64,000 nt of DNA from Macrostomum lignano. Lineage: Eukaryota. Position numbers and translations under genes: made by a program. The stretch spans positions 124,001 to 188,000 of the forward strand of contig NIVC01001984.1 in assembly GCA_002269645.1 (NCBI GenBank), given 5' to 3'. Each line of letters starts with the position of its first letter. Position 1 is the stretch's first letter. A model generated the notes under the pieces. The model did not search any database. It worked only from the letters and a program-made list of their open reading frames with translations, and was not told the origin of the DNA. Below, piece by piece: positions 38,510-64,000 of this stretch.

Positions 38510-38976
<467 letters not shown>

Positions 38977-40002: not shown

Positions 40003-40281
<279 letters not shown>

Positions 40282-40924: not shown

Positions 40925-43900
40925 CTACTGACTGACATCGACGGTGCTGGCAACTTGATTTTCAACTCCGGCCGTCACGCCATCCTTAGCTGGCCTAGAT
41001 TAAAGTTTTTCAATGTTAGGCGAAATCAAAATGAATGTACTGGTTTGAAAAAATGGTTAAATGGTAAAAAATTCGGAATCCTTGAAAGGCAGTCGGAGCT
41101 CTTGTACGTGACAAAGGTCACATAATAAATGTAAGCGCGTGACCTTGGGATCCTGTCGTGATGTGACGATTGACCTTGTAGGCACGCGTTGATTAGGTGG
41201 GAAAATGGGACTCTAAGGTATGACCCTAGACGCGTAGATCTCGTGCGTGAATTTAAGTGCAAGAGCGTGACCTTGAAATCACGCGCTGATTGCGTGTGAC
41301 TTAAATGTACACTGTAAGCACGTGACCTTGAAACCACATATAGACGGCGTGCTAGAATTCAATTACCAGCGCTTGACCTTGAGATCACGCGCTGATTGCG
41401 AGACCTTGCGAGTTAACGTGAAAACAGAAAATGCGACTGTTCTAGCACGTGACGTGGCCCGTACAGCTTCAAAAGCTTTGTTTTACTTACGTGTTCATCT
41501 GTTTTAGCTTTTCTCGATACTTGTCGCTTTCCAGCCAGAAGGCCTCCACAGGCGGGCCCCAGTCGGGCGTCTCCTTGAGAGCGGCCGTCAGTCCACCCCG
41601 ACGCCAGACCTCGTAGATTCCGCAGCAGGGGATGAAGAGCACAGAGCCAACCATCATTAGCCAGCACATCGCTTCGCCCCAAATGGTGAACGGCTCCGAG
41701 TTGTAGCTTGGCGATTGGTACTTGACCAGAGAGAAGATCGCAATGAACTGCGGGTTGGTTGACGTTTTTTAGTAGGCGCATCGGTGTAGGATCACATGAC
41801 AAAAAGATGATAAGGGATTTCTGCTTGCAACGCATCCACAATCTACGTCTCGTGGTTTACTTAGGCCCTACAAGAGATTGTCTCCCATTTTTAGCCAGAA
41901 TAGAAAATAGAACTTTGAACCAGCTTGTTAGGACTTAAAAATTCAGAAGTCCTAACTTCTTCAGGTTCTCAAATTAGCGGTTCCTTAACAGTTTGAAGTA
42001 GAAGTGATTGCAAAAAAACTTTTCGGTTTTAAAGTGACCTAGAATAACGCGTAGAATACTCGTACGTCTTTAACAAGCACGAGAGAAAAGTCACGTGACA
42101 AAAGATTAGATCAGCATCGGCAGAATCTTTAAGCAACCTTGCAGCGACCTTGGATCACGCAGTCAACGCGTGCTTTGACAAAAATTTATTAAAAACTTAC
42201 CAAAATGAGAGCCGGAGTGATCCCAAACCAACAGGCGATCCAGTAAGGCCCCGGACGGAATCCCAGCATCATCTGAATGTCGTTCAGAAAGTTTTTAATC
42301 CCGTACAGGTATGAGATTCCGAGCATCTCTACGAGAGCAACAACGAACAGGTTATAGTAAGCGCAGTAGTCGTTAAGCATTGAGAAATAGTAAATTCCTC
42401 CAGGACAGCACATTGGAATGCCAAGCAGAAACATGACAAGGCACACGACTGACTTGAATATTGCCTGCTTAGTGAAGTTCTCCTGCAACCAGGGCCACTC
42501 GTCCATGCAAGCGGTCAGCACAGTTTCAACCATGGCAAATTGCGAATCGACGCCCAGCGTTAGGATCATGATGAAGAACAGCACGCTCCAAAGCGGAGCG
42601 ACGGGCATGGCGGCGAGGCCCTCGGGATAGGCGACGAACGCCAGGCCCGGACCGCTCTTGGTCACCTCGGCCACCGGCAGGCCCGTCTTGTGCGCCATGA
42701 AACCGATCACCGAGAAGATGGCGAAACCGGCGAATATTGACGTGCCGCTGTTGATGCCCGCTACGATGAGGGCGTCTCTGCAATTGGTAAGTTTGCTTGG
42801 TTTTATAGTGCAGTTCGAACTGTGTGCCCCTTTTTTCAACACAATTTGTGCTGTCAACGCTATTGCGTTGTGTGCCCAAAACTTCCACAAAGTTCAGACC
42901 GGTTTTAGAGGTATTAGTGTAGTGTCAGGTGAGATTGTTGCCTTAATTTCTCGTTGTCCAACATGTACTCTCTGTGGCTTGGGGTTTGGCTTGTAAGCCC
43001 GGGCCGATTTCATGCACAAGTCCCAACACACACGTGGAGATTTAACCCAGGGATATTTTAGCGCGAAAGAGACTGATGAGTGACGCATTTACCACTGAAC
43101 TCATCTGCCTTTGTCTTCGGATCTTTAATCAAATATTTAAAGAGAATGCATTCAGTAAAATTACATCAAGGTGTTGCCATCATTATTAATTGTCGTTTTT
43201 ATAAGCGCCGTCATTTTAATAGTAGCAATGACTACTCGTATTTGTTGAAATAAGCGACTCACTTGTAGCAATTGTTCCGAAACTTGTTATAACTGGACAT
43301 GGTCGTCAGGCAGCCGAAGGCGACGCCAAGCGAGTAGAAAATCTGCACCGCCGCCGCAGACCAGATCTTGAAAACAAATTTCCAGGAATTGCGGCTTCTA
43401 AATAAACACTTAACACCTGCTGTTAAGCAGAGCCAAAACAGATTAATTACCTCAGATGTAAGTAGCAGGCTGAAGTCCGGTTTCAAGTAGAATATGATGC
43501 CCTCCTTGGCGCCCTCCAGCGTTGCGCCGCGGATGAGGAGAATCACCAGCACGAGATAGGGAAACGTGGCGGTGAAGTACACCACCTGGGGAGGTGAAGG
43601 CAGCGCTATATGCAGCGGTATGCATTAACGAGTCCGTCAGCTCAGTAGGGTATTTACAGAAACTTTCACGACTATAAGATCGGTGTTCCATGAGCTTCAC
43701 ATGTGATTCAGCCTGACAGGTTCTGTCAATCCAGCTATTAATCACGCATTCATCCTGTTAGATTAATGTGTCAGTATGGTCTCCTCTATCTATATAGTTA
43801 TATATATACATTTTAGTTGTTAGATAAACTTTCAGAAGATGTATCTAATAGGTAAAAAGTTTTTCTTAACACACTGTCTACCTGTTAGACACACTTTCTA

Positions 43901-46900
43901 CCTGTAAGATAAACCCACTACCTGTTACGCTCGTATATAACTCTTCTATCGGTTGGATACGTAATTATTTCGCCTGTCAGAGTCGTGACTTCAAGACTAT
44001 GACCTGACCAATGTAAACACAATTTCAGATGCATAGCTAAAGTACAAACCTTGACCTGACCACTGTAAACACAATTTCAGATGCATTGCTAAAGTACAAA
44101 TCTTGACTTGACCACTGTAAGCACAATTTCAGACGCATTGCTTAAGTACAAACCTTGACTTGACCACTGTAAGCACAATTTCAGATGCAATGCTAAAGTA
44201 CAAACCTAGACCTGACCACTGTAAACACAATTTCAGATAGATTGCTAAAGTACAAACCTTGACTTGACCACTGTAAACACAATTTCAGATGCATCGCTAA
44301 AGTACAAACCTTGACCTGACCACTGTAAACACAATTTCAGATAGATTGCTAAAGTACAAACCTTGACTTGACCACTGTAAACACAATTTCAGATGCATCG
44401 CTAAAGTACAAACCTTGACCTGACCACTGTAAACACAATTTCAGATAGATTGCTAAAGTGCAAACCTTGACTTGACCACTGTAAACACAATTTCAGATGC
44501 AATGCTAAAGTACAAACCTTGACCTGACCACTGTAAACACAATTTCAGATAGATTGCTAAAGTACAAGCCTTGACCTGACAACTGTAAACACAATTTCAG
44601 ATGCATCTCAAAAGCACAAACCTTCCCAGAAGTCTTGACTCCCTTGAGCAGGCACGCGTAGATGATGATCCAGGCCAACAGCAGGCACAAGGTCACGTGC
44701 CATTGCGGCGGTCCGATGGGGTCGGACATTTTCTTGATTGCTCCGTTTAAACTGGTGTAGCCCAGCATCACTCGTCTGCGCAAAGTTAAAAAGTTGAAAG
44801 GTTAAACATCAAGTTTCAGGAATGTCAGACAAGAAATTAAAACAAAAATACTGAATCAGTTTAATTGCACCTTCACTTACTCAAAGTACTGCTCGCTCGG
44901 AGTTTGATATTGAGTACAGTTGGTCTTTAAATCCTGGGAGCAGGCCTCCGGATTAGCTGTTATCGTTTAATCAAGAGTTTGGCTTAGTTTAGCTTGGAAA
45001 AGTTATTTACAGGCACTGAACAGTAGTTTGTGAGTAGCATCAGGTGCATATTGCCTTAGAAAGTAATTTTTCGTTGAAAATGGCGTCATTATCTTTAATG
45101 TTCATACCTAAGTCGCTTCTTGGGAAATTCTAAGGACGCCTCAAGATTTCGGTGCTTCCTTGACAACATCGTGGCACTTACCTGACTGATCTTGGCGCTA
45201 GTCTGACCTGATCTTGGCGCTAGTCTGACCTAATCTTGGCGCTAGCCTCACCTGATCTCGGCGCTACCCTGACCTGATCTTGGCGCCACCCTCACCTAAT
45301 CTTGCCGCTAGCCTCACCTGATCTTGGCGCTACCCTCACCTGATCTCGGCGCTACCCTCACCTGATCTTGGCGCTACCTTGATCTGATCTTGGCGCTACC
45401 CTCACCTGATCTCGGCGCTACCCTCACCTGATCTTGGCGCTAGCCTCACCTGATCTTGGCGCTAGCCTGACCTGATCTTGGCGCTACCCTGACCTTATCT
45501 TGGCGCTACTTTGACCTGATCTTGGCGCTACCCTCACCTGATCTTGGCGCTAGCCTCACCTGATCTTGGCGCTACCCTCACCTGATCTTGGCGCTAGCCT
45601 CACCTGATCTTGGCGCTACCTTGATCTGATCTTGGCGCTAGTCTGACATCCCAAATATCCAAAATCCAAGACGCTTACGATTGAAACCGGCTCTGAGATT
45701 CCCGGGCACATTGTGAGTGGCGTTGGTGGTGTTGACGCTGAGGTCCCGGCAGTGAAAGTCGTTCCAATAGTTGTTGCAATCCGCCCAGGGCACCTTGGAG
45801 TTGAATGAGGCGAACAGGTAGAACAGGGCCCAGGCTATGATCACGTTGTAGTAGATGGAGACCAGCGCTGAGATGCTGACCATCGCCCAGCCCGTGCCTG
45901 CGGGGTGGCGGTTGTTGAGCAGTGAAACTGAGTTTAGCTGAGAAATTGACTGAGTCTTCGGGATTCTTGGATAGCCAGGGAAGCACTTCGGTTCGCAACT
46001 TCCGGAGCAGGGACTTCAGGACTTCAGGAGCTGGGTAGTTGCAACTTCAAAAACAGGAGTGACCCAGATGAATAGCCTCAGACTAAGTACAACAGAACTT
46101 CAGGAACTGGGTAGTTGGAACTTCAGGAACAGGTGTGACCCAGGTGAATAACCCCAGCCTCAGTCAAACAGAACTTAAGGAACAGGTGTGACCCAGGTAA
46201 ATAACCCCAGCCTCAGTCAAACAGAACTTCAGGAACAGGTGTGACCCAGGTGAATAACCTCAGCCTCAGTCCAACAGAGCTTCAGGAACAGGTGTAAACC
46301 AGGTGAATAACCTCAGCCTCAGTCCAACAGAACTTCAGGAACAGGTGTGACCCAGGTGAATAACCTCAGCCTCAGTCAAACAGAACTTTCAGGAACAGGT
46401 GTGACCCAGGTGAATAACCTCAGCCGCAGTCCAACAGAACTTCAGGAACAGGTGTGACCCAGGTGAATAACCCCAGCCTCAGTCAAACAGAACTTCAGGA
46501 ACAGGTGTGACCCAGGTGAATAACCCCAGCCTCAGTCAAACAGAACTTCAGGAACAGGTGTGACCCAGGTGAATAACCCCAGCCTCAGTCAAACAGAACT
46601 TCAGGAACAGGTGTGACAGAGGTGAATAACCTCAGCCTCAGTCCAACAGAACTTCAGGAACAGGTGTGACAGAGGTGAATAACCTCAGCCTCAGTCAAAC
46701 AGAACATCAGGAACAGGTGTGACCCAGGTGAATAACCCCAGCCTCAGTCAAACAGAACTTCAGGAACAGGTGTGACCCAGGTCAATAACCTCAGCCTCAG
46801 TCCAACAGAACTTCAGGAACAGGTGTGACTCAGGTGAATAACCTCAGACGCAGTCCAACAGATACCTTTCAGCAGCGGGCACGCCTTCCAGATGGTGACG

Positions 46901-47791
46901 GGGCCGAGGTTGCCGAACTGACCAAACGCCACCTCCATGTAGAACAGCGGCAGGGCGGCGACACCCAGCATGATCAGGTAGGGGATCAGAAAGGCACCTC
47001 CGCCGTTCTTATAGCACAGGTAGGGGAAGCGCCACACGTTGCCGAGGCCCACGGCGTAGCCGATGCAGGACAGCAGGAAGTCGAACTGGCCGGTCCAGTT
47101 TCCGCGAGCCTCGTTCTCGTCAGCTGCCTCGCCTTCGCCCGCCTGCGGGGCCTCCGCGCTGTTGGATGCGTTCTGCCGGGTGGGGATAGTGTGGGGAGTG
47201 ACTTGTAGAGTGACTTGAGGAGTGACTTGTGGAGTGACTTGAGGAGTGACTTGTGGAGTGACTTGAGGAGTGACTTGTGGAGTGACTTGTGGAGTGACTT
47301 GTGGAGTGACTTGTGGGGTGACTTGTGGAGTGACTTTTAACTTGTGGAGTGACATGCTGAGTGACATGTGAAGTGACTTGTGGAGTAACTTTTGGAGTGA
47401 ATTGCGGAGTGACTTGTGGAGTGAACTGGGGAGTGACTTGTAGAGTGACTTGGGCTGTAAACTTGTCGAATGACATGTGGAGTGAATTGTGAAGTGACTT
47501 TTAGAGTGACATGTGGAGTGACTTGTAGAGTGACTTTTTTAGTGACATGTGGAGTGACTTGTAGTGTGAAAGCGGAAGATAGAGTGACTGAAAGATGAGA
47601 GTGACGGTTTTTCAAGTGCCACTTCCTTAGAGGGATAATGCTAAATGAGACTGACCATTTCGTTACTATAGTAAACCTATTTTGAAAGATTTTTTTATCG
47701 ATCAGCAAGTTGCAGGCACCGTATCAGAGTCTGGAGTGAATGTATCGAATTAGGAAGGAAAGACTTTTCAAGGTCAAATGGAACTCACCAT
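40925..47791 (-). CDS. SLC6 Na+/Cl- dependent amino-acid transporter (proline/glycine-type subfamily), copy A, ~633 aa; exons 47791-47789 (ATG), 47172-46866, 45897-45679, 44956-44881, 44775-44622, 43585-43451, 43366-43263, 42777-42201, 41747-41491, 40994-40925
   Basis: [100 protein letters not shown]. All introns are GT-AG and the exon lengths sum to 1902 nt, ending in TAG. TM1 has Gly where monoamine transporters have Asp. An in-frame upstream ATG near 47869 could extend the N-terminus. Confidence 0.93.
44000..44600. repeat. 52-bp intronic minisatellite of SLC6 copy A (~11 units); inverted paralogous array at 52740-53000 (~5 units)
   Basis: Unit on the gene strand AAGGTTTGTACTTTAGCAATGCATCTGAAATTGTGTTTACAGTGGTCAGGTC. 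Confidence 0.93.
45185..45640. repeat. 22-bp minisatellite (CCTGATCTTGGCGCTACCCTCA); inverted paralogous array at 51290-52160
   Basis: Tandem units in the homologous intron of both SLC6 copies. Confidence 0.93.
46070..46860. repeat. 53-bp minisatellite (TTCAGGAACAGGTGTGACCCAGGTGAATAACCTCAGCCTCAGTCCAACAGAAC); inverted paralog at 49962-50650
   Basis: Tandem units starting almost at the donor site in both copies. Confidence 0.93.
47195..47560. repeat. 12-bp minisatellite (GGAGTGACTTGT); inverted paralog at 49275-49635
   Basis: Lies in the first intron of each SLC6 copy; explains the VTPQ/SHST/SLHK ORFs. Confidence 0.92.
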
Positions 47792-49030
47792 CTGAATGTC
47801 GATCTGCTGAGTTCTGAAACGTTGCCCGCAGCTCAACAGACCCGTAAAAGTCTGTGCGACTCGTTTCATTTTAACAAAAACTGAAATCAATTTTTTCTTA
47901 AATCATTTTTGAACCAGTTTTTCAGCGGCTCTTTTTCTGAACCGGAAATTTCCGGATCTCAAGCAAAGTGGAAATTTTTTTTATTTTTTTGTTATACTCA
48001 GTTGCACTTTTGCAAAAGAAAATCAAAGAGCAACAGAACTAAAAATTAAGATACACTCTGAATGCCGGGTTTTACCATAGACTATTCGCACATAGGCTAA
48101 TGGAATGAAAAATTCGAATTATCTTCGAGTGTTGACTTCTTTATATTTATACCTTTTCATACATTGCTTTCAATTTGCATTCTGTGCATTCTTAATAATT
48201 ATTTCACCTTGACGATTCTATTAAAAAAGATCATAAATTATGAATGTTTGTTACCGAATTTACATATTTATGCGTCGGAAATTTGGTTGACTTCACGCAA
48301 GCAGACCAAGACCGGGTCTGTGTCGGTCAGCCATAGCCCCACATCGTTTCTCCACAACACTTTCCGTCTACACCTGACCTTAATTATCTTTAATAGAGGT
48401 TTTGCCATTAAAATATTTATTAGTCTACTTTACTCAATAGTTTATGCAAGTAAACTAAATTTTACATTAACAAGCGAGTTTTCATCTCCTTCTCACTTAC
48501 TCTTAGTAGGCTAGTTTAGCATTTTTCTTATTTATTTATTCTGTGGCCCAGCTGGTCTTTTTAATGGCTCAGAGTGTCGTTAAGGTTCAAGTTAGCCCTG
48601 GCGAAAGCATTTGACAGATTCATTAAAACTAATCTTCTTGAGATATGCTGGCTCTTGCAGTCATTGACAAAACTCGGTGGCTAAAGCTATCTGTATTCCA
48701 TATCTTCCGAATGATATGATATAAAATTATGAACGATATTTAAACTGGTTTGCTGCTAAATGTCTAGGGCGAAACTTCTTTTGAAATTTTGCTCTAATTT
48801 ATTTATTTATTTTGTTTTTCAAAAGTACAAATATGAACTCGGTTAAAACATCTCGTTCAATTCTGTTTTTCAGATTCTGAAAATTTAAGTTAAAAAAACC
48901 CGCATTTAATAAGTTGTTTGTGTTCTATGTTTTCTTCAACAAAATAAAGAAGAAGCAAGTTGCAGATTCTGTTACGGGGCTCTTCGGCTGCGTGCAAGGT
49001 TTCAGAACTCATTGTCAAGTCCAAATGCAT

Positions 49031-52000
49031 ATGGTGAGTCACCACTTATACTATAGCACATGATTTACCTGTCACTTCACCAAGTGTGAGAGACGGTCAG
49101 TAAATTTACCACACCTATGGTTTTTGCGAAACAGTTGTCACTCTTTAAAAACGGTCACTTCAAATCGGTCAATCAATACAGCGGATACTTTACAACTGTA
49201 CTTTACAACTGTCACTCTAGAGACAGTCACTGTTATCTACGAGTAAAAGTGTCACTTATTCCACAGGTTTCCCTCCACAAGTCACCCACAAATCACTCCA
49301 AAAGTCACTCCACAAGTCAAAATTCACTCCACAAGTCACTCCACAAGTCACTCCACAAGTCACTTAACAAGTCACTCCACAAGTCAAAAGTCACTCCACA
49401 AGTAACTCCACAAGTCACTTAACAAGTCACTCCACAAGTCAAAAGTCACTCCACAAGTAACTCCACAAGTCACTCTACGAGTCACTCCACAAGTCACTCC
49501 ACAAGTCACTCCACAAGTCACTCTACAAGTCACTCCACAAGTCACTCCACAAGTCACTCCTCAAGTCACTCCACAAGTCACTCCTCAAGTCACTCCACAA
49601 GTCACTCCTCAAGTCACTCTACAAGTCACTCCCCACACTATCCCCACCCGCCAGAACGCATCCAACAGCGCGGAGGCCCCGCAGGCGGGCGAAGGCGAGG
49701 CAGCTGACGAGAACGAGGCTCGCGGAAACTGGACCGGCCAGTTCGACTTCCTGCTGTCCTGCATCGGCTACGCCGTGGGCCTCGGCAACGTGTGGCGCTT
49801 CCCCTACCTGTGCTATAAGAACGGCGGAGGTGCCTTTCTGATCCCCTACCTGATCATGCTGGGTGTCGCCGCCCTGCCGCTGTTCTACATGGAGGTGGCG
49901 TTTGGTCAGTTCGGCAACCTCGGCCCCGTCACCATCTGGAAGGCGTGCCCGCTGCTGAAAGGTAACTGAAGTTCTGTTAGACTGAGGCTGAGGTTATTGA
50001 CCTGGGTCACACCTGTTCCTGAAGTTCTGTTAGACTGAGGCTGAGGTTATTGACCTGGGTCACACCTGTTCCTGAAGTTCTGTTGGACTGAGGCTGAGGT
50101 TATTCACCTGGTCAAACCTGTTCCTGAAGTTCTGTTGGACTGAGGCTGAGGTTATTGACCTGAGTCACACCTGTTCCTGAAGTTCTGTTGGACTGAGGCT
50201 GAGGTTATTCACCTGGGTCACACCTGTTCCTGAAGTTCTGTTGGACTGAGGCTGAGGTTATTCACCTGGGTCACACCTGTTCCTGAAGTTCTGTTGGACT
50301 GAGGCTGAGGTTATTCACCTGGGTCACACCTGTTCCTGAAGTTCTGTTTGACTGAGCCTGAGGTTATTCACCTGGGTCAAACCTGTTCCTGAAGTTCTGT
50401 TGCACTGAGGCTGAGGTTATTCACCTGGGTCACACCTGTTCCTGAAGTTCTGTTAGACTGAGGCTGAGGTCATTCACCTGGGTCACACCTGTTCCTGAAG
50501 TTCTGTTTGACTGAGGCTGAGGTCATTCACCTGGGTCACACCTGTTCCTGAAGTTCTGTTAGACTGAGGCTGAGGTTATTCACCTGGTCAAACCTGTTCC
50601 TGAAGTTCTGTTTGACTGAGTCTGAGGTTATTCACCTGGGTCACACCTGTTCCTGAAGCTCTAACTACCCTGTTCCCGTAGCGCCAACTACCCTGTTCCT
50701 GAAGCTCCAACTACCAGTTCCTGAAGCTCTAACTACCCTGTTCCTGAAGCTCCAACTACCCTGTTCCCGTAGCGCCAACTACCCTGTTCCTGAAGCTCTA
50801 ACTACCTGTTCCTGAAGCTCTAACTACCCTGTTCCTGAAGCTCTAACTACCTGTTCCTGAAGCTCCAACTACCCTGTTCCTGAAGTCCTGAAGTCCCTGC
50901 TCCGGAAGTTGCGAACCGAAGTGCTTCTCCGGCTGTCCAAGAATCCCGAAGCCTCAGTCAATTTCTCAGCTAAACTCAGTTTCACTGCTCAACAACCGCC
51001 ACCCCGCAGGCACGGGCTGGGCGATGGTCAGCATTTCAGCGCTGGTCTCCATCTACTACAACGTGATCATAGCCTGGGCCCTGTTCTACCTGTTCGCCTC
51101 ATTCAACTCCAAGGTGCCCTGGGCGGATTGCAACAACTATTGGAACGATTTTCACTGCCGGGACCTCAGCGTCAACATCACCAACGCCACTCACAATGTG
51201 CCCGGGAATCTCAGAGCCGGTTTCAATCGTAAGCGTCTTGGGTATTGGAAATTTAGGATATCAGACTAGCGACAAGACCAGTTCAAGGTAACGCCAAGAT
51301 AAAATCAGGGTAGCGCCAAGATCAAATGAGGCTAGCGCCAAGTTCAGGTGAGGCTAGCGCCAAGATCAGGTCAGGGTTGCGCCAAGATCAGGTGAGGCTA
51401 GCGCCAAGATCAGGTGAGGGTAGCGCCAAGATCAGGTGAGGCTAGCGCCAAGATCAGGTGAGGGTAGCGCCAAGATCAGATGAGGCTAGCGCCAAGATCA
51501 GGTGAGGGTAGCGCCAAGGTCAGGTGAGGCTAGCGCCAAGATCAGGTCAGGGTTGCGCCAAGATCAGGTGAGGGTAGCGCCAAGATCAGATCAAGGTAGT
51601 GCCAAGATCAGGTGAGGGTAGCGCCAAGTTCAGATCAAGGTAGTGCCAAGATCAGGTGAGGGTAGCGCCAAGATCAGATCAAGGTAGCGCCAAGATCAGA
51701 TCAAGGTAGAGCCAAGATCAGGTGAGGCTAGCGCCAAGATCAGATCAAGGTAGCGCCAAGATCAAGTGAGGCTAACGCCAAGATCAGGTGAGGGTAGCGC
51801 CAAGATCAGGTGAGGGTAGCGCCAAGATCAGGTGAGGGTAGCGCCAAGATCAGGTGAGGGTAGCGCCAAGATCAGGTGAGGCTAGCGCCAAGATAAAATC
51901 AGACTAGCGCCAAGATCAGATGAGGCTAGCGCCAAGTTCAGGTGAGGCTAGCGCCAAGATCAGGTGAGGGTAGCGCCAAGATCAGATCAAGGTAGCGCCA

Positions 52001-55000
52001 AGATCAGGTGAGGCTAGCGCCAAGATCAGATGAGGCTAGCGCCAAGATCAGATCAAGGTAGCGCCAAGATCAGGTGAGGCTAGCGCCAAGATCAGGTGAG
52101 GGTAGCGCCAAGATCAGATCAAGGTAGCGCCAAGATCAGGGTAAGGCTAGCGCCAAGATCAGTCAGGGAAGTGCAACGATGTTGTCAAGCAAGCACCGAA
52201 ATCTTGAGGCGTCCTTAGAATTTCCCAGCGAAGCGCTTTAGGTATGATTTTAAAGATAATGACGTCATTTTCAACGAAAAATTACTTTTTAAGGCAATAT
52301 GCAGCTGATGCTACTCACAAACTACTGTTCAGTGCCTGTAAATAACTTTTCTAAGCTAAACTAAGCCAAATTCTTGATTAAACGATAACAGCTAATCCGG
52401 AGGCCTGCTCCCAGGATTTAAAGACCAACTGTACTCAATATCAAACTCCGAGCGAGCAGTACTTTGAGTAAGTGAAGGTGCAATTAAAACTGATTCAGTA
52501 TTTTTGGGTCAATTTCTCGGCTGACATCCCTAAATCTTGATGTTTAACTTTTCAACTTTTTAACTTTTTAACTTTGCGCAGACGAGTGATGCTGGGCTAC
52601 ACCAGTTTAAACGGAGCAATCAAGAAAATGTCGGACCCCATCGGACCGCCGCAATGGCACGTGACCTTGTGCCTGCTGTTGGCCTGGATCATCATCTACG
52701 CGTGCCTGCTCAAGGGAGTCAAGACTTCTGGGAAGGTTTGTGCTTTTGAGATGCATCTGAAATTGTGTTTACAGTAGTCAGATCAAGGTTTGTACTTTAG
52801 CAATGCATCTGAAATTGTTTTTAAATTGGTCAGGTCAAGGTTTGTACTTTAGCATTGCATCTGAAATTGTGTTTACAGTGGTCAGGTCAAGGTTTGTACT
52901 TTAGCAATGCATCTGAAATTGTGTTTACAGTAGTCAGGTCAAGGTTTGTACTTTAGCAATGCATCTGAAATTGTGTTTACAGTTGTCAAGTCAAGGTTTG
53001 TGTGTTTGTGATGCACCTGATATTGTGTTTACAGGTCTGTGAGGTCGTGACTCTGACTTGTAAATAAACGGGTCTGACAGCTAGACGTGTTTGAAAACAC
53101 GTGTGTTAAAAGGTGACATTACAGATGACATTTGGTATTGATAATGCCGGTACTATCTGACGAATAAACGGACGCTGTCTTCACCTTCCCAGGTGGTGTA
53201 CTTCACCGCCACATTTCCCTATCTCGTGCTGGTGATTCTCCTCATTCGCGGCGTCACGCTGGAGGGCGCCAAGGACGGCATACTTTTTTACTTGAAACCG
53301 GACTTCAGCCTGTTACTTACATCTGAGGTGATCTGTTTTGGTTTTGCTAACAGCAGGTGTTAAGTGTTTATTTAGAAGCCGCAATTCCTGGAAATTTGTT
53401 TTCAAGATCTGGTCTGCGGCGGCGGTGCAGATTTTCTACTCGCTTGGCGTCGCCTTCGGCTGCCTGACGACCATGTCCAGTTATAACAAGTTTCGGAACA
53501 ATTGCTACAAGTGAGTCGCTTAGCTCAATGAGTCTGCTTCTTTTAGCGATCAATAAAGTAACGTTTATTGCTACGTAATCTCGCCACCAGTGATGGATGC
53601 AGTTCTAAAACTGGGGGGGGAGTGCCCTTGCGCACAAAATTGACCTCATGTTACGTCGTCTGACTCTCGAGAAACCGAGTGCTTACATGCCTGTCAATGA
53701 GAAACTCAGAGTCTCTGTACACCTTGAATGAGCATAACTTTTCATCCTCAACAAACCCAACGATCGTCACTGCAGAGATGTCCTCATCGTAGCGGGCATC
53801 AACAGCGGCACGTCAATATTCGCCGGTTTCGCCATCTTCTCGGTGATCGGTTTCATGGCGCACAAGACGGGCTTGCCGGTGGCCGAGGTGACCAAGAGCG
53901 GTCCGGGCCTGGCGTTCGTCGCCTATCCCGAGGGCCTCGCCGCCATGCCCGTCGCTCCGCTGTGGAGCGTGCTGTTCTTCATCATGATCATAACGCTGGG
54001 CGTCGATTCGCAGTTTGCTTTCGTTGAGAATGTGCTCACGACTTGCATGGACGAGTGGCCCTGGTTGCAGGAGAACTTCACTAAGCAGGCAATATTCAAG
54101 TCAGTCGTGTGCCTTGTCATGTTTCTGCTTGGCATTCCAATGTGCTGTCCTGGAGGAATTTACTATTTCTCAATGCTTAACGACTACTGCGCTTACTATA
54201 ACCTGTTCGTCGTGGCTATCGTAGAGATGCTCGGAATCTCATACCTGTACGGGATTAAAAACTTTCTGAACGACATTCAGATGATGCTGGGATTCCGTCC
54301 GGGGCCTTACTGGATCGCCTGTTGGCTTGGGATCACTCCGGCTCTCATTTTGGTAAGATTTCCTCAAACTAGAGTTGAAAGCAGACGTGGGGTGGATTCA
54401 AAATAATTTCAAGGTCACTTGAAGTTGCTGTTGTTATTTTCGTCGTTATAGTTAAAAGCTGTTGACACGTGACTTATCTTACGTTCAAGAAGCCTGAGTG
54501 AAAGTAGTTTTAAGGCTGTAACTTTTTGGCAACTTCTGCGGGTATGTCACGACCCAGTTATGATGATTGAACATGTACGCTCGTATGTCGGAACATGCAA
54601 TAAGCAAAAATTCAAATGTAGCCTTAGTCAGCTTAACTAAGGACCTCATCAATCGCGTGCGCACACGTTAGAAGCAGTCTTCTCGCGCACCGGATAAATT
54701 AAAGAGTACATGTAGCTTCATACTTTTCTGTCTCTGGCTTACTATAGTTAGTCGACATAAGATTTTTACGGTAGCGCATCTTAAAATCGATGTCAATCAA
54801 CCCGCAGTTCATTGCGATCTTCTCGCTGGTCAAGTACCAATCGCCAAGCTACAACTCGGAGCCGTTCACCATTTGGGGCGAAGCGATGTGCTGGCTGATG
54901 ATGGTTGGCTCTGTGCTCTTCATCCCCTGCTGCGGAATCTGCGAGGTCTGGCGTCGGGGTGGACTGACTGCCGCTCTCAAGGAGACGCCCGATTGGGGCC

Positions 55001-55732
55001 CGCCTGTGGAGGCCTTCTGGCTGGAAAGCGATAAGTATCGAGAAAAGCTGAAACAGATGAACACGTAAGTAAAACAAAGCTTTTGAAGCTGTACGGGCAT
55101 TGATTTTTTGTTCCAAGATAGCGTACATTGATTTCTGACATTCACGCGATCAACGCGTGATCTCAAGGTTTGCAAACCTACACAGTGTACATTTATTCCA
55201 AGCACGATTAACATTAAGGGCGTACGCTTGATTTCAAGGTCACAGCGCTTGAATCTAATTTTAACGCGCGATCAACGCGTGATTTCAAGGTCACCAGCCT
55301 ACGCTGTGCGGCACACATTTAATTGACACCACATACGCGTGATTTCTACGTAACACGCTTGGATGTACTTGAAATTCTCTCATGCAATCAACGGCGTGAT
55401 TCAAGGGTCAACCACTTAAACAAATTCTAACACGTGATCAACGTGTGGATTTATAGGCCTCAAGAAAGCGTATGTTACGAGCTATATCTAGATACACACC
55501 AATGCAAGGAACCACTTCAAAATTAAAATGATATATAAATTCAAGGAATGTTAAAATGTACCAGCAAACCCTCTTTAGTTATTTTCTGTGCATAATTTAC
55601 ATTCACGTCAATCTTCTCGACTATATTTAACTAACTGTCAGGCCAGCTACAGATCCCGTGACAGGACATGAAAACCGGCCGGGTGTTGACGATTTCAGCC
55701 AGCCCTCGAACACGAAGGAAACCAAAACGTAA
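49031..55732 (+). CDS. SLC6 amino-acid transporter, copy B (inverted paralog of copy A), ~640 aa; exons 49031-49033 (ATG), 49655-49961, 51010-51228, 52392-52467, 52582-52735, 53193-53327, 53407-53510, 53776-54352, 54808-55064, 55642-55732
   Basis: Internal exon lengths are identical to copy A (307, 219, 76, 154, 135, 104, 577, 257). GT-AG introns; total 1923 nt, ending in TAA at 55730-55732. Confidence 0.93.
50650..50885. repeat. ~23-bp minisatellite (CCTGTTCCTGAAGCTCTAACTAC), expanded only in SLC6 copy B
   Basis: About 10 units; copy A has only 2-3 degenerate units at ~46020-46130. Confidence 0.88.
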
Positions 55733-57442: not shown

Positions 57443-60400
57443 TTAAACAAAGCTGGCTTCAGTGTACGGACTAAATGGAGCTCTCTGCTGCATCGCGTGC
57501 AACTGCTGTTGCTGCGTCTGCTGCAATGGAAATCCCGCGGATTTTCCGTCGACACTGAACCCGCCTCGGGGCAGAGTGTGGCTCTGCCGGCGCGGCTGGG
57601 GTGTCGATAAGACGGCGCGATTTCCGCCGACACCGCCGCGGCCCTCGATTTCGTAATAACGATGCGACATTGGCTGTTGCTGCTGTTGCAGAGTCTGCTT
57701 TTTCTGGCCTTGGCTGGGCTGATGCTGCTGTTGCGATGAAGAGTCCAGAGTCTGGTAGTGCTGAGACAGCGGCTGACGGCGGGACGAAACAGCGACAGTT
57801 GACTGGCGGGGAAGCTCCGAGTCAGTGGCACCGCCTGGAAGGTGAAATGATCGGGATCCACCCAGATTTGATTTGAGATCTACTCAGCACTGAATCGGGA
57901 TCTACTCAGCACTGAATCGGGATCTACTTAACACTGAATCGGGATCTACTCAACACTGAATTGGGATCTAATCAAAATTGAATTTGGATCTACTCAGGAT
58001 TATTGAATCAGGATCTACTCAGCACTGAATCGGGATCTACTCAACACTGAATCGGGATCTACTCAGCACTGAATCGGGATCTACTCAACACTGAATCGGG
58101 ATCTACTCAGCACTGAATCGGGATCTACTCAGCACTGAATCGGGATCTACTCAGCACTGAATCGGGATCTACTCAACACTGAATCGGGATCTATTTAACA
58201 CTTAATTGGGATCTACTCAGCACTGAACCGGGATCTACTCAGCACTGAATCGGGATCTACTCAGCACTGAATCGGGATCTACTCAACACTTAATTGGGAT
58301 CTACTCAGCACTGAACCGGGATCTACTCAGCACTGAATCGGGATCTACTCAACACTGAATTGGGATTTACTCAACACTTAATTGGGATCTACTCAGCACT
58401 GAATTGGGATCTACTCAACACTGAATTGGGATTTACTCAACACTTAATTGGGATCTACTCAGCACTGAATTGGGATCTACTCAGCACTGAATCGGGATCT
58501 ACTCAACACTGAATTGGGATCTACTCAACACTGAATCGGGATCTACTCAGCACTGAATCGGGATCTACTCAACACTGAATTGGGATTTACTCAACACTTA
58601 ATTGGGATCTACTCAGCACTGAACCGGGATCTACTCAGCACTGAATCGGGATCTACTCAACACTGAATTGGGATTTACTCAACACTTAATTGGGATCTAC
58701 TCAGCACTGAATTGGGATCTACTCAGCACTGAATCGGGATCTACTCAACACTGAATTGGGATTTACTCAACACTTAATTGGGATCTACTCAGCACTGAAT
58801 TGGGATCTACTCAACACTGAATTGGGATTTACTCAACACTTAATTGGGATCTACTCAGCACTGAATTGGGATCTACTCAGCACTGAATCGGGATCTACTC
58901 AACACTGAATTGGGATCTACTCAACACTGAATCGGGATCTACTCAGCACTGAATCGGGATCTACTCAACACTGAATTGGGATCTACTCAACACTGAATTG
59001 GGATCTACTCAGCACTGAATTGGGATCTACTCAACACTGAATCGGGATCTACTCAACACTGAATCGGGATCTACTCAGCACTGAATCGGGATCTACTCAA
59101 CACTGAATCGGGATCTACTCAACACTGAATCGGGATCTACTCAGCACTGAATCGGGATCTACTCAACACTGAATCGGGATCTACTCAGCACTGAATCGGG
59201 ATCTACTCAGCACTGAATCGGGATCTACTCAGCACTGAATCGGGATCTACTCAGCACTGAATCGGGATCTACTCAGCACTGAATCGGGATCTACTTAGCA
59301 CTGAATTGGGATCTCAGGAACAATCCTGAGCAGCAATAACAGGTGTCACTCACCCAGACTCAGACTAGCTGAAGAGTACAGCCGATCCCGAGTGACAGTC
59401 GCGTGTTTGAGTTTGTTAAGCTGAAGCATCTGCTGCTGGTGCTGCAACTGCTGAGCGCTGCTGTAGGCTCCGTAATCATCCTGTGTTACAAATTGTGTTA
59501 CAATATTATTTTTCATGACAAACTGTGGCAGGTTCTAATGCGATTTAGCTGGCCAAGTTTTAATTGGGGATTTGGATTAGGGATCTCTTTTAGTGAATTC
59601 TATCTGATTTGTACTTCCCGACTGCGCTGTCTATCTTCTCTCCCTCTCCTCTCTGCCTTGCCTCCTCTTGCTCTCTTCTTTCCCTCTTTTCTCTCCCTCT
59701 TTTCTCTCCTCTCCCTCTCCTCTCTCCTTACTCTGCTCCCTATCCCCCTCTCTACCTCTCCCCTCTCCTCCTCTCTCCTCTCCCTCCCCTCTTCACCTCT
59801 TCTCTCCCTCTCCCCCTCCCCTTTTCCTCTCTCCTCTCCATCCCTCTCCCTCTCTTCTCTCCATTCTCCCTTCCCTTTTATCATTCTACTCCCCTTAATT
59901 ACACACTCAACACCGGCAACCTCATCTCACCCCATCCTCAACTTTCTTTCATGTTGATCGCAAACGTTTCCCATTTAGCAACCATTTTTTCCTACAACTA
60001 TCACCATCCTCCCCTTTATCTACATCACTAATCATTGATGCTCAAAGCTCCATTTCTTTCTCCTTTGCATTGGACACAAAGAACTGATTTTGAACTTGCA
60101 TACTTGCTCCAACCTAAAGCTAGACCTGCCCCAACTCAAACACTCATTAATAATAACCAGTTTAAAAAAATCAGTCATATCCAATCCATACGAAAAATAT
60201 ACCAACTAAAGTATAAAAAATATGAAGCTCATAAAATCTATACACAAGGGACTACGAGTATAAATATTCTCGTTAGGCGAGAGGATCCGACACAAAATTA
60301 ATACTCTCTCGTATCACCCCGGCGTCCCCAATAAAATCAGTCCGAGAGCTGCATCATTAATCTACTGGGCAACAAATTAGTTATAACAAAAAAGATAGCC

Positions 60401-63400
60401 AGTCCCCTCTGTATGCAGCAGTGGGTTCTGAGTCCGCTCGAGCGGTCAAGACTTTAATCAGGATGAACAAAAAGTACTCAAGGGTTACCCCCGCTACTTA
60501 CAGTTTATATCCCCTGTGACCCTGTCGCTTCAGTTTTTCCCAGACTCATACCCTTCATTTAACTTTACCTTGATTTATTAAGTTTACTATTTACAGAATT
60601 AATAAAATAAAATTTACCTCAACGTTGAAGTTTGTCTTATAAGTTGGCGGGCAGTAATAAGGACTTTGCTGGTCAATCATCTTTGCGTGCACACTGTCGG
60701 GATCTGAAGTTGAGCATTGTTTATTGGGATTTTTTACAAAATTAAATCCTTTTTATTTATGCTTTATTGGGATCAATGAGATTGGGATCTGTGAGATTGG
60801 GATCTGTGAGATTGGGATCTGTGAGATTGGGATCTGTGGGATTGGGATTTGTGAGATTGGGATCTGTGGGATTGGGATCTGTGAGATTGGGATCTATAGG
60901 ATTGGGATCTGTGGGATTTGGGATCTGTGGGATTGGGATCTGTGAGTGAGATTGGGATCAATGAGATTGAGATCTGTGAGATTGGGATCTGTGAGTGAGA
61001 TTGGGATCTGTGAGTGAGATTGGGATCAATGAGATTGAGATCTGTGAGATTGGGATCTGTGGGGTTGGGATCTGTGGGGTTGGGATCTGTGGGGTTGGGA
61101 TCTATGGGGTTGGGATCTGTGGGATTTGGATCTGTGAGATTGGGATCTGTGAGATTGGGATCTGTGAGATTGGGATCTATGAGATTGGGATCTGTGGGAT
61201 TTGTGGGATTGGGATCTGTGAGTGAGATTGGGATCTGAGGGGTTTGGGATCTATGAGATTGGGAGCTGTGAGATTGGGATCAATGAGATTGGGATCTGTG
61301 AGATTGGGATCTGTGGGGTTGGGATCTGTGGGGTTGGGATCTGTGAGATTGGGATCTGTGATGTTGGGATCTGTGGGATTGGGATCTGTGGGATTGGGAT
61401 CTGTGAGATTGGGATCTGTGAGATTGGGATCTGTGGGGTTGGGATCTGTGAGATTAGAATCTGTAGGATTGGGATATGTAAGATTTAATACTGTTTTCAG
61501 CTCCTCACCGACTTCAGTCGCCAGCCTCCCAGCTTGGAGGGTGCCAGTTCCGCAGGCGGCACCAGCAGCCCCAGCAGCAGCCGCTGTCCTGCTATTCAAT
61601 GCAGCGGCCGAGGCCCTTCGCCGGACAATGAGGCAGACGATAGCAAAACAAGCTGCAACCAGCAGCAGCAGTGTCACCACCAGGCAGATGATGACGGACT
61701 CGTTGCTGAACGCCAACAGCGACCCATTCCCGTAGTTATTGACATTGTGCGGCGATCGGCCATTTGTCAAGCTGGAGTCGCCTCCTCTGAAGGCAGCGTC
61801 GGCCGCAGTCTGGGCCGGGATCTCCGCTCGATATTCAACCGGTTGAGAGCACATACGGGGCTGGCCTAGGTCGCAGGCTCGAATGCTGAGAGGCAATTTG
61901 ATGCTGTGAGTAGATTGGCCAGGTAATTGTCGGATGTTGTGCAGAGGCTGGCTGACCAGGATGCTGCCCGTGTCCGAGTGAACGCCGAACCGCTGGTCTG
62001 AGCTGTTCAAGAGCTCGTACACCACCTGCGAGAGGGAGGTGGAGAAGGAGAGATGAGATAAAAATGGCACGGATTTAATTTTTTCTTAGCGACTTGGGAA
62101 TTTAGAAACTTGGATATTATAAATTATGGGTTCTGTGGGGTTGGGATTTGGGATCAATTGGATTGGGATCTGTGAGATTGGGATCTGTGGGATTGGAATC
62201 TGTGGGGTTGGGAGCTGTGTTATTGGAATCTGTGAGATTGGGATCTGTGGGATTGGGATCTGTGGGATTGGGATCTGTGGGATTGAGATCTGTGAGATTG
62301 GGATCTGTGGGATTGGGATCTGTGGGATTGGGATCTGTGGGGTTGGGAGCTGTAAGATTGGGATCTGTGGGATTGGGATCTGTGGGATTGGGATCTGTGG
62401 GATTGGGATCTGTGGGATTGGGATCTGTGGGGTTGGGAGCTGTGTTATTGGAATCTGTTAGATTGGGATCTGTGAGGTTGGGAGCTGTGTTATTGGAATC
62501 TGTGAGATTGGGATCTGTGAGGTAGGGATCTGTGGGATTGGGATCTGTGGGGTTGGGAGCTGTGTTATTGGAATCTGTGAGATTAGAATTTGTGGGAATG
62601 GGATCTGTGAGGTAGGGATCTGTGGGATTAGGATCTGTGAGGTAGGGATCTGTGAGATTGGGATGTGGGATTGGGAACTGTGGGGTTGGGATCTGTGTTA
62701 TTGGAATCTGTGAGATTGGGATCTGTGGGATTGGGATCTGTGGGATTGGGATCTGTGGGATTGGGATCTGTGAGATTGAGATCTGTGGGATTGGGATCTG
62801 TGGGGTTGGGAGCTGTGAGATTGGGATCTGTGGGATTGGGATCTGTGGGATTGGGATCTGTGGGATTGGGATCTGTGGGGTTGGGAGCTGTAAGATTGGG
62901 ATCTGTGGGATTGGGATCTGTGGGATTGGGATCTGTGGGGTTGGGAGCTGTGTTATTGGAATCTGTGAGATTGGGATCTGTGAGGTTGGGAGCTGTGTTA
63001 TTGGAATCTGTGAGATTGGGATCTGTGAGGTTGGGAGCTGTGTTATTGGAATCTGTGAGATTGGGATCTGTGAGGTAGGGATCTGTGGGATTGGGATCTG
63101 TAGGGTTGGGGGAGCTGTGTTATTGGAATCTGTGAGATTAGAATTTGTGGGATTGGGATCTGTGAGGTAGGGATCGGTGGGATTGGGATCTGTGAGGTAG
63201 GGATCTGTGAGATTAGGATGTGGGATTGGGAACTGTGGGGTTGGGATCTGAGGGGTTGGGATCTAAAGGATTAGGATCTATAGTATCTATAGGATCCTGG
63301 TCTGGGATCTCTGTGATTTTCAGTTTACAGCTAAGGTATTTACAGCTGAGCACACAGAGCTCAGTGTCCCGAACCTTCTGGTTAATTCCCTCATCCGGGT

Positions 63401-63630: not shown

Positions 63631-63689
63631 CTGGGTGCGATGGCAAGATGTATAATTGTAAATACATTTAACTAACCAGCTAAGGCATG

Positions 63690-64000
63690 TATCAAATAAT
63701 CTGTCAGATCAATTTATCAAATACATTAGATTATTTATTAATACGAGTAAATCAATCAATCAATCAGATTAATCAATAAATTCGATCAATCAATCAATAC
63801 ATTTGATCAGCCAATCAGATCAACCAATCAATCAAAAACTTAATCAATCAGAGCAATCAATCAATCAGATCAATTGTTCAATCAATCAGAGCAATCAATC
63901 AATCAATCAATGAATCAATCAATCAATCGTATCAAACAATGAATGAATGAATGAATGAATCAATCAATTAATCGTATCAAACAATGAATGAATGAATCAA
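63690..64000. repeat. Degenerate (AATC)n/(AATG)n microsatellite
   Basis: Direct reading of the sequence. Confidence 0.85.

What the first reader, a model, noticed from the sequence alone, without database searches (positions are those of the whole stretch)
42510..54043. 33-nt divergence island at the TM8 substrate-pocket residue in otherwise near-identical SLC6 paralogs
Seen in sequence: copy A (42542-42510, minus) reads CAA TTT GCC ATG GTT GAA ACT GTG CTG ACC GCT ([11 protein letters not shown]). Copy B (54011-54043) reads CAG TTT GCT TTC GTT GAG AAT GTG CTC ACG ACT ([11 protein letters not shown]). That is 9 differences in 33 nt, 5 of them synonymous, against about 9 in the other ~544 nt of the same exon (by-eye count). 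Established knowledge: in the LGxDSxFxxxE motif of TM8, the M/F position aligns with LeuT Ile359 (hDAT Gly426), a known S1 substrate-selectivity residue; from memory the proline transporter SLC6A7 has FAFLE here. Inference: high synonymous divergence confined to this patch is what gene conversion would leave if selection rejected conversion tracts covering a functional difference. The copies may therefore transport different amino acids while sharing an essentially identical scaffold.
Basis: partly seen in the sequence, partly recalled or inferred. Interest (0 to 1): 0.85.

Follow-up and report, generated by a model that had tools for sequence, protein, structure and literature searches.

The report
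Conversion-resistant TM8 patch in flatworm SLC6 twins
Two head-to-head amino-acid transporter genes of the flatworm Macrostomum lignano are kept almost identical by copying sequence from one another, except for a few tiny patches, and the largest patch changes a residue that touches the substrate; this is a clean new example of a known evolutionary pattern, and no functional difference has been shown.

Summary
The two 33-nt strings sit exactly where stated and differ at 9 positions: 5 synonymous, and 4 nonsynonymous in 3 codons. The other 544 nt of the same 577-nt exon also hold 9 differences.

The window is Macrostomum lignano contig NIVC01001984.1. The copies are the annotated genes Mlig012780 (A, minus) and Mlig012133 (B, plus). 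They lie head to head and belong to the GlyT/PROT branch of SLC6.

Interlocus gene conversion is well supported:
- Introns 7 and 8 are saturated (p about 0.5), yet the exon between them is 97% identical.
- The 5' half, introns included, shows no A/B distinction.
- Seven polymorphisms are shared between A and B across three assembled copies of the locus.

Seven of the 9 patch differences are fixed between A and B in all three loci, so the patch is not an assembly artefact.

Residue 415 (M in A, F in B) aligns with human PROT F403, which contacts proline in the cryo-EM structure.

- The patch is not unique. A second island lies in exon 6, and there are several mini-islands.
- The N- and C-terminal tails differ.
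- Significance is only marginal if tight sub-clusters count as single mutational events.
- PROT F403L changes kinetics, not specificity.

This is a new member of a known kind.

The parts
40925..47869 (-). Copy A: SLC6 gene Mlig012780.g2 (PAA61967.1, 659 aa), 10 coding exons. It keeps the ancestral-like TM8 motif [13 protein letters not shown].
   Evidence: Gene model built. It is identical to the annotated gene in L004. The protein is 100% identical to P0071/P0195.
49025..55732 (+). Copy B: SLC6 gene Mlig012133.g2 (PAA61968.1, 642 aa), 10 coding exons. It has the derived TM8 motif [13 protein letters not shown].
   Evidence: the protein equals P0194.
47870..49024 (.). Unique spacer of about 1.15 kb between the two divergently transcribed start codons. 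It is the centre of the imperfect palindrome and the presumed promoter region of both genes.
   Evidence: No A/B similarity inside about 47,872-48,947; similarity starts in exon 1 on each side.
42201..42777 (-). Copy A exon 8 (577 nt; TM6b/IL3 to TM10). It is 96.9% identical to B exon 8 although both flanking introns are unalignable.
53776..54352 (+). Copy B exon 8 (577 nt).
42510..42542 (-). TM8 patch in copy A (codons 412-422, [11 protein letters not shown]). The core that is fixed between gene types in all three loci is 42512-42534 (cds 1242-1264, 7 sites).
54011..54043 (+). TM8 patch in copy B ([11 protein letters not shown]). The type-fixed core is 54019-54041. F415 aligns with hPROT F403 (S1 pocket). 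N418 and T422 lie on the same helix face.
43490..43524 (-). Second divergence island, copy A exon 6 (cds 821-855; extracellular loop 3; A274, E281, I284). It holds 6 type-fixed sites in 35 nt.
53254..53288 (+). Second divergence island, copy B exon 6 (V274, D281, L284).
42335..42339 (-). Mini-island in copy A (cds 1437 synonymous plus cds 1441, L481 in A and I in B). The counterpart in B is 54214-54218.
42778..43262 (-). Copy A intron 7 (485 nt). It is saturated against B intron 7 (53511-53775, 265 nt): p = 0.47, with 117 type-fixed sites in 261 ungapped columns. Divergence within each type is only 0.7%.
41748..42200 (-). Copy A intron 8 (453 nt). It is saturated against B intron 8 (54353-54807): p = 0.50, 191 type-fixed sites.
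44622..47172 (-). Fully homogenised 5' block of copy A (exon 2 to exon 5, with introns 2-4 and their 53-nt and 22-nt minisatellites). The counterpart in B is 49655-52735. There are no type-fixed exon differences, A-B distance is about equal to within-type distance, and many polymorphisms are shared.
40925..40994 (-). Copy A last coding exon (tail [22 protein letters not shown]). It is strongly diverged from the B last exon at 55642-55732 (tail [29 protein letters not shown]).

Best explanation
Copies A and B are old, head-to-head duplicates of a PROT/GlyT-type SLC6 amino-acid transporter in Macrostomum lignano. They evolve in concert through interlocus, inverted-repeat gene conversion.

Near the centre of the palindrome, conversion sweeps exons and introns alike. 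In the 3' half the introns have diverged beyond recognition and only the exons, still similar enough to pair, are homogenised by short tracts.

The TM8 patch is the largest of about ten small stretches that stay type-specific. Almost every such stretch contains an amino-acid replacement with one or two neighbouring synonymous differences. The most likely reason is that conversion tracts overwriting the B-specific residues (or the A-specific ones) are removed by selection. Only tracts that stop short of those residues survive, so tightly linked silent differences are sheltered.

Copy B is the derived protein. It acquired F415, the residue that contacts the substrate ring in human PROT, together with N418 and T422 on the same face of TM8. 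Copy A keeps the Met/Thr/Ala state common in invertebrate relatives.

Shown: the gene conversion, the type fixation, and the homology of residue 415 to an S1 residue. Inferred: that selection maintains the patch, and that the two transporters differ in substrate handling, more probably in affinity or turnover than in substrate identity.
For: Old duplicates homogenised by conversion:
- Exon 8 is 96.9% identical, while the flanking introns 7 and 8 have p = 0.47-0.50 and every difference is type-fixed. The last exons and tails are diverged.
- Introns 2-4 and 6 and exons 2-5 and 7 show no A/B structure. In exons 2-5 the A-B distance within a locus is 3.3, against 5.3 within a type.
- Seven polymorphisms with the same two alleles segregate in both A and B among the three loci. 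About 0.13-0.4 would be expected from independent hits (P = 1e-10 to 2e-7).
- Individual copies carry the other type's alleles right up to the islands. g3A is B-like at cds 780, 870 and 877 but A-type at 821-855. g2B is A-like at 867-877 and 1092-1132 but B-type from 1213.

Patch real and stable:
- Seven of the 9 differences are fixed between A and B on three separate contigs (NIVC01001671, NIVC01001984, NIVC01000702).

Selection signal:
- Fixed N:S is 11:9 against polymorphic N:S of 11:37 (Fisher P = 0.021).
- Eight of 9 fixed synonymous sites lie within 5 nt of a fixed replacement (permutation P < 1e-5), against 2 of 37 polymorphic synonymous sites within 6 nt.
- The fixed synonymous sites polarise symmetrically: 3 A-like, 3 B-like, 3 neither. 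This fits old neutral divergence sheltered next to selected sites.

Functional position:
- Residue 415 aligns without gaps to hPROT F403, GAT1 T400 and the GlyT2 Thr.
- hPROT F403 lines the proline pocket, and F403A and F403L impair transport.
- The other five pocket residues (Y40, Y120, Y309, G312, F315) are identical in A, B and hPROT.
- Residues 415, 418 and 422 fall within a 60-degree arc of the helix.

Direction of change:
- Eight of 11 fixed replacement sites are derived in B relative to the paralog Mlig024770. Met is the commonest residue at this position in invertebrate homologs.
Against: - The three loci are only about 1-2% diverged and come from one inbred line and one assembly. Type fixation across them is largely shared ancestry and only a weak test of long-term resistance to conversion.
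- Most fixed replacements are conservative (A/V, E/D, I/L, L/I), which makes selection for each of them questionable.
- The MK-like test is modest (P = 0.02), and one mini-island (cds 1002/1004) simply abuts the diverged intron 7.
- Single copies show their own triplet-spaced clusters (g3B 1473/1476/1479; g1A 1377/1380/1401). Clustered mutation therefore occurs here, and at the event level the TM8 clustering is marginal.
- Within the TM8 patch every polarisable change, silent ones included, is on the B lineage. This also fits a single B-lineage event.
- pN/pS in the patch is below 1.
- hPROT F403L did not change specificity.
- There are no expression or transport data.
Confidence: 0.55

Rival explanations
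1. Neutral mosaic. The patch and the other mini-islands are leftovers of the original, old divergence that short, randomly placed conversion tracts have not yet covered. Alternatively, dense mismatches locally block heteroduplex extension or are restored by patchy mismatch repair. No selection or functional difference is involved.
For: - Patch pS (0.625 in this locus, 3 of about 8 silent sites fixed) is comparable to the saturated introns on either side.
- A second island in loop EL3 carries only conservative replacements.
- Fixed synonymous sites polarise symmetrically.
- The three loci are too similar (about 1-2%) to show that the patch has survived many conversion events.
Against: - Old neutral remnants should mostly be purely synonymous, because silent sites are saturated while replacements are rare. 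Instead 10 of 11 fixed clusters contain a replacement.
- Fixed N:S (11:9) exceeds polymorphic N:S (11:37), P = 0.021.
- Recent tracts in g3A and g2B stop at the island edges.
Confidence: 0.2
2. Recent clustered change on the B lineage. The B patch arose after homogenisation, either as one or a few multi-nucleotide mutations or as a micro-conversion of about 25 nt from an unlinked third SLC6 paralog. It was inherited by all three loci at the recent whole-genome duplication. The silent differences then say nothing about age.
For: - In the patch, 6 of 7 fixed sites are derived in B, none in A, and one is unresolved; these include 2 of the 3 silent sites.
- The differences form three tight sub-clusters with adjacent-base changes.
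- Copy-specific triplet-spaced clusters elsewhere show that such events happen on the 1% divergence timescale.
- Event-level clustering is only marginal.
Against: - No donor was found. Mlig024770 has the A-like sequence, and none of about 350 retrieved SLC6 proteins has [10 protein letters not shown].
- In the EL3 island, adjacent differences polarise to different lineages (821 changed in B, 822 in A), which is not what single events give.
- Persistence of a neutral novelty in an exon that is otherwise being converted would still need explaining.
Confidence: 0.2
3. Artefact. The patch is an assembly, polishing or haplotype chimera, or the 'paralogs' are mis-assembled alleles.
For: The genome is a repeat-rich neopolyploid assembled from long reads, and the window is from that single assembly.
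Against: - The same inverted gene pair, with the same patch in the same gene type, is present on three different contigs that differ from one another by about 1-2%.
- A and B have unalignable introns 7 and 8 and different terminal exons, so they are not alleles.
- UniProt entries from another annotation show both motifs.
Confidence: 0.02

Closest known systems
Peaks of divergence in duplicated genes under gene conversion (Innan 2003, RHCE/RHD; Teshima & Innan 2008, primate red/green opsin exon 5; Tigriopus GOT1 paralogs, PMC3728101; reviewed in PMC3924837)
   Same: The paralogs are kept near-identical by ongoing interlocus conversion. A narrow peak of divergence, including silent sites, is centred on amino-acid differences at a functionally critical position. 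The differences are fixed between the paralogs while the flanks share polymorphisms.
   Different: - In opsins the functional effect of the sheltered residues is measured. Here it is only inferred by homology.
- Here the pair is an inverted, head-to-head repeat with a gradient: the 5' half is homogenised with its introns, the 3' half in exons only.
- The peak is very narrow (23-29 nt).
- Three WGD or allelic replicates of the locus are available, but no population sample.
Human proline transporter PROT/SLC6A7 (cryo-EM structures 9wml etc.; PMC13402342)
   Same: It is among the best PDB matches (E = 2.7e-175). All six residues forming the pyrrolidine pocket are identical in copy B (Y, Y, Y, G, F, F). 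Five of the six are identical in copy A, which has Met at the F403 position.
   Different: - Overall identity is only about 50%, and GlyT2 scores slightly higher. Orthology to PROT was not tested by phylogeny.
- Copy B also has Asn where PROT, GlyT1/2 and nearly all relatives have Thr (the ET motif).
- The substrate is unknown.
TM8 S1 position in other SLC6 transporters (LeuT I359, hSERT G442, hDAT G426, hNET G423, GAT1 T400, GlyT1 L422 in the numbering of PMC13402342)
   Same: It is the same alignment column, four residues after the Na2-site Ser of the D-S motif, with no gaps. The hNET and GlyT1 equivalences are stated in PMC13402342. The LeuT, SERT and DAT equivalences rest on established knowledge and were not recomputed here.
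   Different: In those proteins the residue differs between subfamilies that separated hundreds of millions of years ago. Here it differs between two genes that are otherwise 98% identical in coding sequence.
Arm-to-arm gene conversion in palindromes and inverted repeats (e.g. primate Y-chromosome palindromes)
   Same: The structure is an inverted duplication with a short unique spacer. The arms are homogenised without regard to coding sequence close to the centre.
   Different: The arms are only about 7 kb long and are not uniformly identical. The distal half is homogenised only in exons and contains type-fixed islands.

Membership tests
SLC6 / NSS (Pfam PF00209, SNF) | Significant match to the SNF profile and to solved SLC6 structures over the whole 12-TM core | tested here: met
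   PF00209 is precomputed for the identical protein P0071. phmmer against the PDB gives GlyT2 at E = 1.3e-178 over residues 12-593.
SLC6 / NSS (Pfam PF00209, SNF) | Conserved TM1 [10 protein letters not shown] motif and TM8 D-S Na2-site motif | tested here: met
   Both copies have [29 protein letters not shown] and LGVDSQF.
GlyT/PROT/ATB0,+ amino-acid branch of SLC6 | Best matches are GlyT2, PROT and GlyT1 rather than monoamine or GABA-type transporters | tested here: met
   PDB ranking: GlyT2 598 bits, PROT 587, GlyT1 551, DAT 520, BGT1 511, GAT1 498. Named homologs are of GlyT, PROT or ATB0,+ type.
PROT (SLC6A7) orthologs | Proline pocket residues Y53, Y133, Y297, G300, F303, F403 (hPROT numbering) | tested here: inconclusive
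   Copy B has all six. Copy A has five plus Met at the F403 position. The pocket match is by alignment only.
PROT (SLC6A7) orthologs | Orthology by phylogeny, and proline transport | not tested
   No tree was built. GlyT2 scores marginally higher than PROT. Transport cannot be tested with these tools.
Selection-maintained divergence peak under gene conversion (Innan / Teshima-Innan model) | Ongoing interlocus gene conversion between the paralogs | tested here: met
   There are 7 shared polymorphisms (P <= 2e-7), no type structure in the 5' exons and introns, and 97% identical exons between saturated introns.
Selection-maintained divergence peak under gene conversion (Innan / Teshima-Innan model) | Local peak of divergence that includes synonymous sites | tested here: met
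   pS is 0.625 in the patch against 0.051 elsewhere. The scan statistic gives P <= 1e-5 at the nucleotide level but only 0.02-0.13 at the event level.
Selection-maintained divergence peak under gene conversion (Innan / Teshima-Innan model) | Differences fixed between paralogs while the flanks exchange | tested here: met
   Seven patch sites are fixed in 3 of 3 loci, and flanking sites show A/B exchange. Caveat: the three loci come from one inbred line and are only about 1-2% apart.
Selection-maintained divergence peak under gene conversion (Innan / Teshima-Innan model) | Peak centred on residues whose difference changes function | not testable with these tools
   Only homology to hPROT F403 is available. 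The MK-like excess of fixed replacements (P = 0.021) is indirect.

The most novel reading that the evidence does not exclude
The three B-specific residues on one face of TM8 (F415, N418, T422) are a selected, conversion-protected switch. They would give copy B a different substrate profile or transport kinetics from copy A and independently recreate the vertebrate PROT Phe in a flatworm. The pair would then be a natural minimal swap experiment defining how this TM8 face tunes SLC6 amino-acid transporters.
Probability: 0.2. Interest if true: 0.65.

Novelty: new member of a known kind. Interest (0 to 1): 0.45.

Why it matters
If selection maintains the patch, the locus pinpoints, without any mutagenesis screen, a three-residue face of TM8 that tunes a PROT/GlyT-type transporter. 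The other 598 core residues act as an almost perfect isogenic control.

It also offers a compact system for the theory of neofunctionalisation under gene conversion. The inverted pair has a visible gradient from whole-arm to exon-only homogenisation, and it is replicated three times by the recent whole-genome duplication of M. lignano.

Practically, it warns that near-identical paralogs in this model organism are not necessarily redundant. RNAi or CRISPR reagents against one copy will hit the other unless they target the islands or the terminal exons.

Tried and rejected
- The first protein search, with the exon-8 peptide, returned only fragments of 51% identity or less and missed the source species. 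The full-length query identified Macrostomum lignano.
- The exhaustive representative search gave no relative above about 60% identity and no annotation. It was useful only to show that [10 protein letters not shown] is not seen elsewhere.
- A search with the B-type patch peptide, meant to find a possible donor paralog, failed: the 36-aa query was too short and the 42-aa query returned no candidates. The third-paralog donor hypothesis therefore could not be tested genome-wide.
- Mlig024770 (69% identity, L003) was tested as donor and rejected. It carries the A-like patch and does not match the copy-specific clusters.
- Assembly or haplotype chimera was rejected.
- Purifying selection alone cannot explain 97% exon identity, because silent sites are as conserved as replacement sites while the flanking introns are saturated.
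- No structure prediction was run. The tool returns no coordinates from which pocket contacts could be measured, and the published hPROT structure answers the question by homology.
- No literature on gene conversion or SLC6 paralogs in Macrostomum was found.

Full report
**What is at the coordinates.** I reconstructed both genes from splice sites and homology.
- Copy A runs from 47869 to 40925 (minus) and copy B from 49025 to 55732 (plus). Each has ten coding exons with canonical GT-AG introns.
- The window is 100% identical to GenBank contig NIVC01001984.1 of the Macrostomum lignano assembly GCA_002269645.1. My models coincide with the annotated genes Mlig012780.g2 (A, 659 aa) and Mlig012133.g2 (B, 642 aa).
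- The genes lie head to head across a unique spacer of about 1.15 kb, forming an imperfect palindrome of about 14.8 kb.

**The count and its significance.**
- Exon 8 is 577 nt in both copies and carries 18 differences. Nine lie within 29 nt (cds 1236-1264, codons 412-422) and nine in the remaining 544 nt, exactly as reported.
- Five patch differences are synonymous. Four are nonsynonymous, in three codons: M415F, T418N and A422T.
- Over the shared 1836-nt coding sequence there are 39 differences and 13 amino-acid differences.
- Random placement of 39 differences never gave 9 in 29 nt in 200,000 trials.
- pS is 0.625 in the patch against 0.051 elsewhere.
- The patch is not unique. Exon 6 has 10 differences in 135 nt, and there is a 3-in-8 cluster at cds 1434-1441.

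**Evidence that the copies are old duplicates homogenised by gene conversion.**
- In this locus, introns 7 and 8, which flank exon 8, align no better than shuffled sequence. Introns 1-4 and 6 are 81-96% identical, and intron 5 is half and half.
- The last exons encode different C-terminal tails, and exon 1 gives A a 26-residue N-terminal extension.
- The assembly contains the same inverted pair on two further contigs (L001 = NIVC01001671, L002 = NIVC01000702). These copies are plausibly products of the recent whole-genome duplication and/or alleles of this hidden polyploid (PMC5704211, PMC10733133).
- In a six-sequence alignment, introns 7 and 8 differ between A and B at p = 0.47-0.50, with essentially every difference fixed by gene type and only 0.7-2% divergence within a type.
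- By contrast, introns 2, 3, 4 and 6 and exons 2-5 and 7 show no type structure at all. A-B distance equals within-type distance, there are almost no fixed differences, and there are dozens of shared polymorphisms.
- In the coding sequence, seven sites carry the same two alleles in both A and B. Independent mutation would give 0.13-0.4 such sites (P between 1e-10 and 2e-7).
- Individual copies carry the other type's alleles up to the edges of the islands. g3A is B-like at 780, 870 and 877 but A-type at 821-855. g2B, the window's copy B, is A-like at 867-877 and 1092-1132 but B-type from 1213 onward.
- Purifying selection alone cannot explain this, because silent sites in the exons are conserved while the adjacent introns are saturated.

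**The patch across loci.**
- Seven of the nine differences (cds 1242, 1243, 1245, 1251, 1253, 1263, 1264) are fixed between A and B in all three loci. Site 1236 is private to this locus's B copy. At 1260 the difference arose in two of the A copies.
- All three B proteins read [11 protein letters not shown] and all full-length A proteins read [11 protein letters not shown]. An assembly or haplotype chimera is therefore excluded.
- Altogether there are 20 type-fixed sites: none in the first 820 nt, six in exon 6 (821-855), twelve in exon 8 and two in exon 9.
- They form about eleven tight clusters, ten of which contain a replacement.
- Fixed N:S is 11:9 against 11:37 for polymorphic sites (Fisher P = 0.021).
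- Eight of nine fixed silent sites lie within 5 nt of a fixed replacement (P < 1e-5), against 2 of 37 polymorphic silent sites within 6 nt.
- This is the pattern predicted when conversion erases neutral differences except those tightly linked to selected ones (Innan 2003; Teshima and Innan 2008; summarised in PMC3924837).

**Caveats on the selection inference.**
- The three loci are only about 1-2% apart and come from one inbred line, so fixation across them is mostly shared ancestry.
- Most fixed replacements are conservative.
- One mini-island (1002/1004) merely continues the diverged intron 7.
- Individual copies carry private, triplet-spaced clusters (g3B 1473/1476/1479; g1A 1377/1380/1401), so clustered mutation or micro-conversion occurs on a short timescale.
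- If each tight sub-cluster is one event, the TM8 concentration is only marginally significant (P = 0.02-0.13).
- I polarised the changes with the 69%-identical paralog Mlig024770 (L003). Replacements are mostly derived in B (8 B-derived, 1 A-derived, 2 unresolved), while silent sites are symmetric overall (3/3/3). Within the TM8 patch, however, every polarisable change is on the B lineage.
- A B-lineage burst or a micro-conversion from an unsampled third SLC6 gene therefore remains possible. Mlig024770 is not that donor, and none of about 350 retrieved homologs has the B motif. A genome-wide search could not be run.

**What the residue does.**
- The proteins belong to the GlyT/PROT/ATB0,+ branch of SLC6. 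The best PDB matches are GlyT2, PROT and GlyT1.
- TM8 aligns without gaps to human PROT (LTLGLDSQFAFLETIVTA), GlyT2 (DTMFATIET) and GAT1 (DSQFCTVEG). Residue 415 therefore corresponds to PROT F403, the GlyT2 Thr and GAT1 T400.
- In the 2026 cryo-EM study of human PROT, the pyrrolidine ring of proline sits in a pocket formed by Y53, Y133, Y297, G300, F303 and F403. F403 is stated to be equivalent to hNET G423 and GlyT1 L422.
- In that study F403L kept strict proline specificity but raised Km from 64 to 357 uM and reduced Vmax to about 20%. F303, not F403, was the specificity filter (PMC13402342).
- Both flatworm copies have the five other pocket residues. B has the Phe and A has Met, which is the commonest residue in invertebrate relatives.
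- Residues 415, 418 and 422 lie within a 60-degree arc of the helix. By inference they continue from S1 down the cytoplasmic pathway.
- Asn at 418 replaces a Thr that is nearly invariant in this branch.
The experimental precedent, however, points to a difference in affinity or turnover rather than a different substrate.

**Verdict.**
Gene conversion and a type-fixed, conversion-resistant patch at an S1 residue are well founded. Selection as the cause is favoured but not proven, and a functional difference is untested.
- The phenomenon is a known kind (opsins, RHCE/RHD, Tigriopus GOT1). This is a new, tidy member with useful extras: the inverted arrangement, the gradient from whole-arm to exon-only homogenisation, and three replicate loci.

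Noticed in passing
L002:2292-2867 (copy A of locus g3, exon 8, cds 1150): A 1-nt deletion shifts the frame of copy A in one of the three loci, which is why GenBank PAA78200.1 is truncated at 428 aa. It is either an incipient pseudogene in one homeolog or allele, or a long-read indel error.
   Followed up: partly
window 44000-44624, 45186-45640, 46118-46862, 47195-47562 (copy A) and 49273-49632, 49966-50662, 51267-52162, 52733-53034 (copy B): Introns 1, 2, 3 and 5 of both genes are largely made of minisatellites with periods of 12, 53, 22 and 52 nt. The same arrays sit in mirror positions in A and B, but copy numbers differ between the copies and among the three loci.
   Followed up: partly
cds 1473/1476/1479 in L002 copy B; cds 1377/1380/1401 in L001 copy A; cds 1131/1132 in the B copies of L001 and L002: Clusters of two or three silent changes spaced 1-3 nt apart are private to single copies or shared by two copies. 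They do not match the paralog Mlig024770. This suggests multi-nucleotide mutation, micro-conversion from unknown donors, or polishing errors.
   Followed up: partly
window 47789-47791 and 49031-49033: In both genes the shared start codon is the last three bases of exon 1 (ATG|GTGAGT), so exon 2 begins directly with codon 2. Copy A has an additional in-frame ATG 78 nt upstream, and copy B reads MHM.
   Followed up: no
window 57443-64000 (minus strand): An annotated multi-cadherin-repeat gene (more than 1118 aa) lies tail to tail with copy B in all three loci. A 65-copy 22-nt array (57877-59314) and two 15-nt arrays (60766-61485, 62142-63279) lie within its span.
   Followed up: no
window 1-40300: The rest of the window is unusually rich in tandem arrays. 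More than 20 arrays have periods of 14-48 nt. Long tetranucleotide runs are (CTAA)116 at 13381-13843, (AGAT)116 at 38511-38976, (AGAC)69 at 40004-40280 and its complement (TCTG)56 at 29996-30219. Gene content here was not examined.
   Followed up: no
window 43367-43450 / 53328-53406: The 84-nt intron 6 is 96% identical between A and B and is homogenised together with exon 7 and the 3' end of exon 6. Conversion tracts in the 3' half are therefore not strictly exon-limited; they are limited by where similarity survives.
   Followed up: yes
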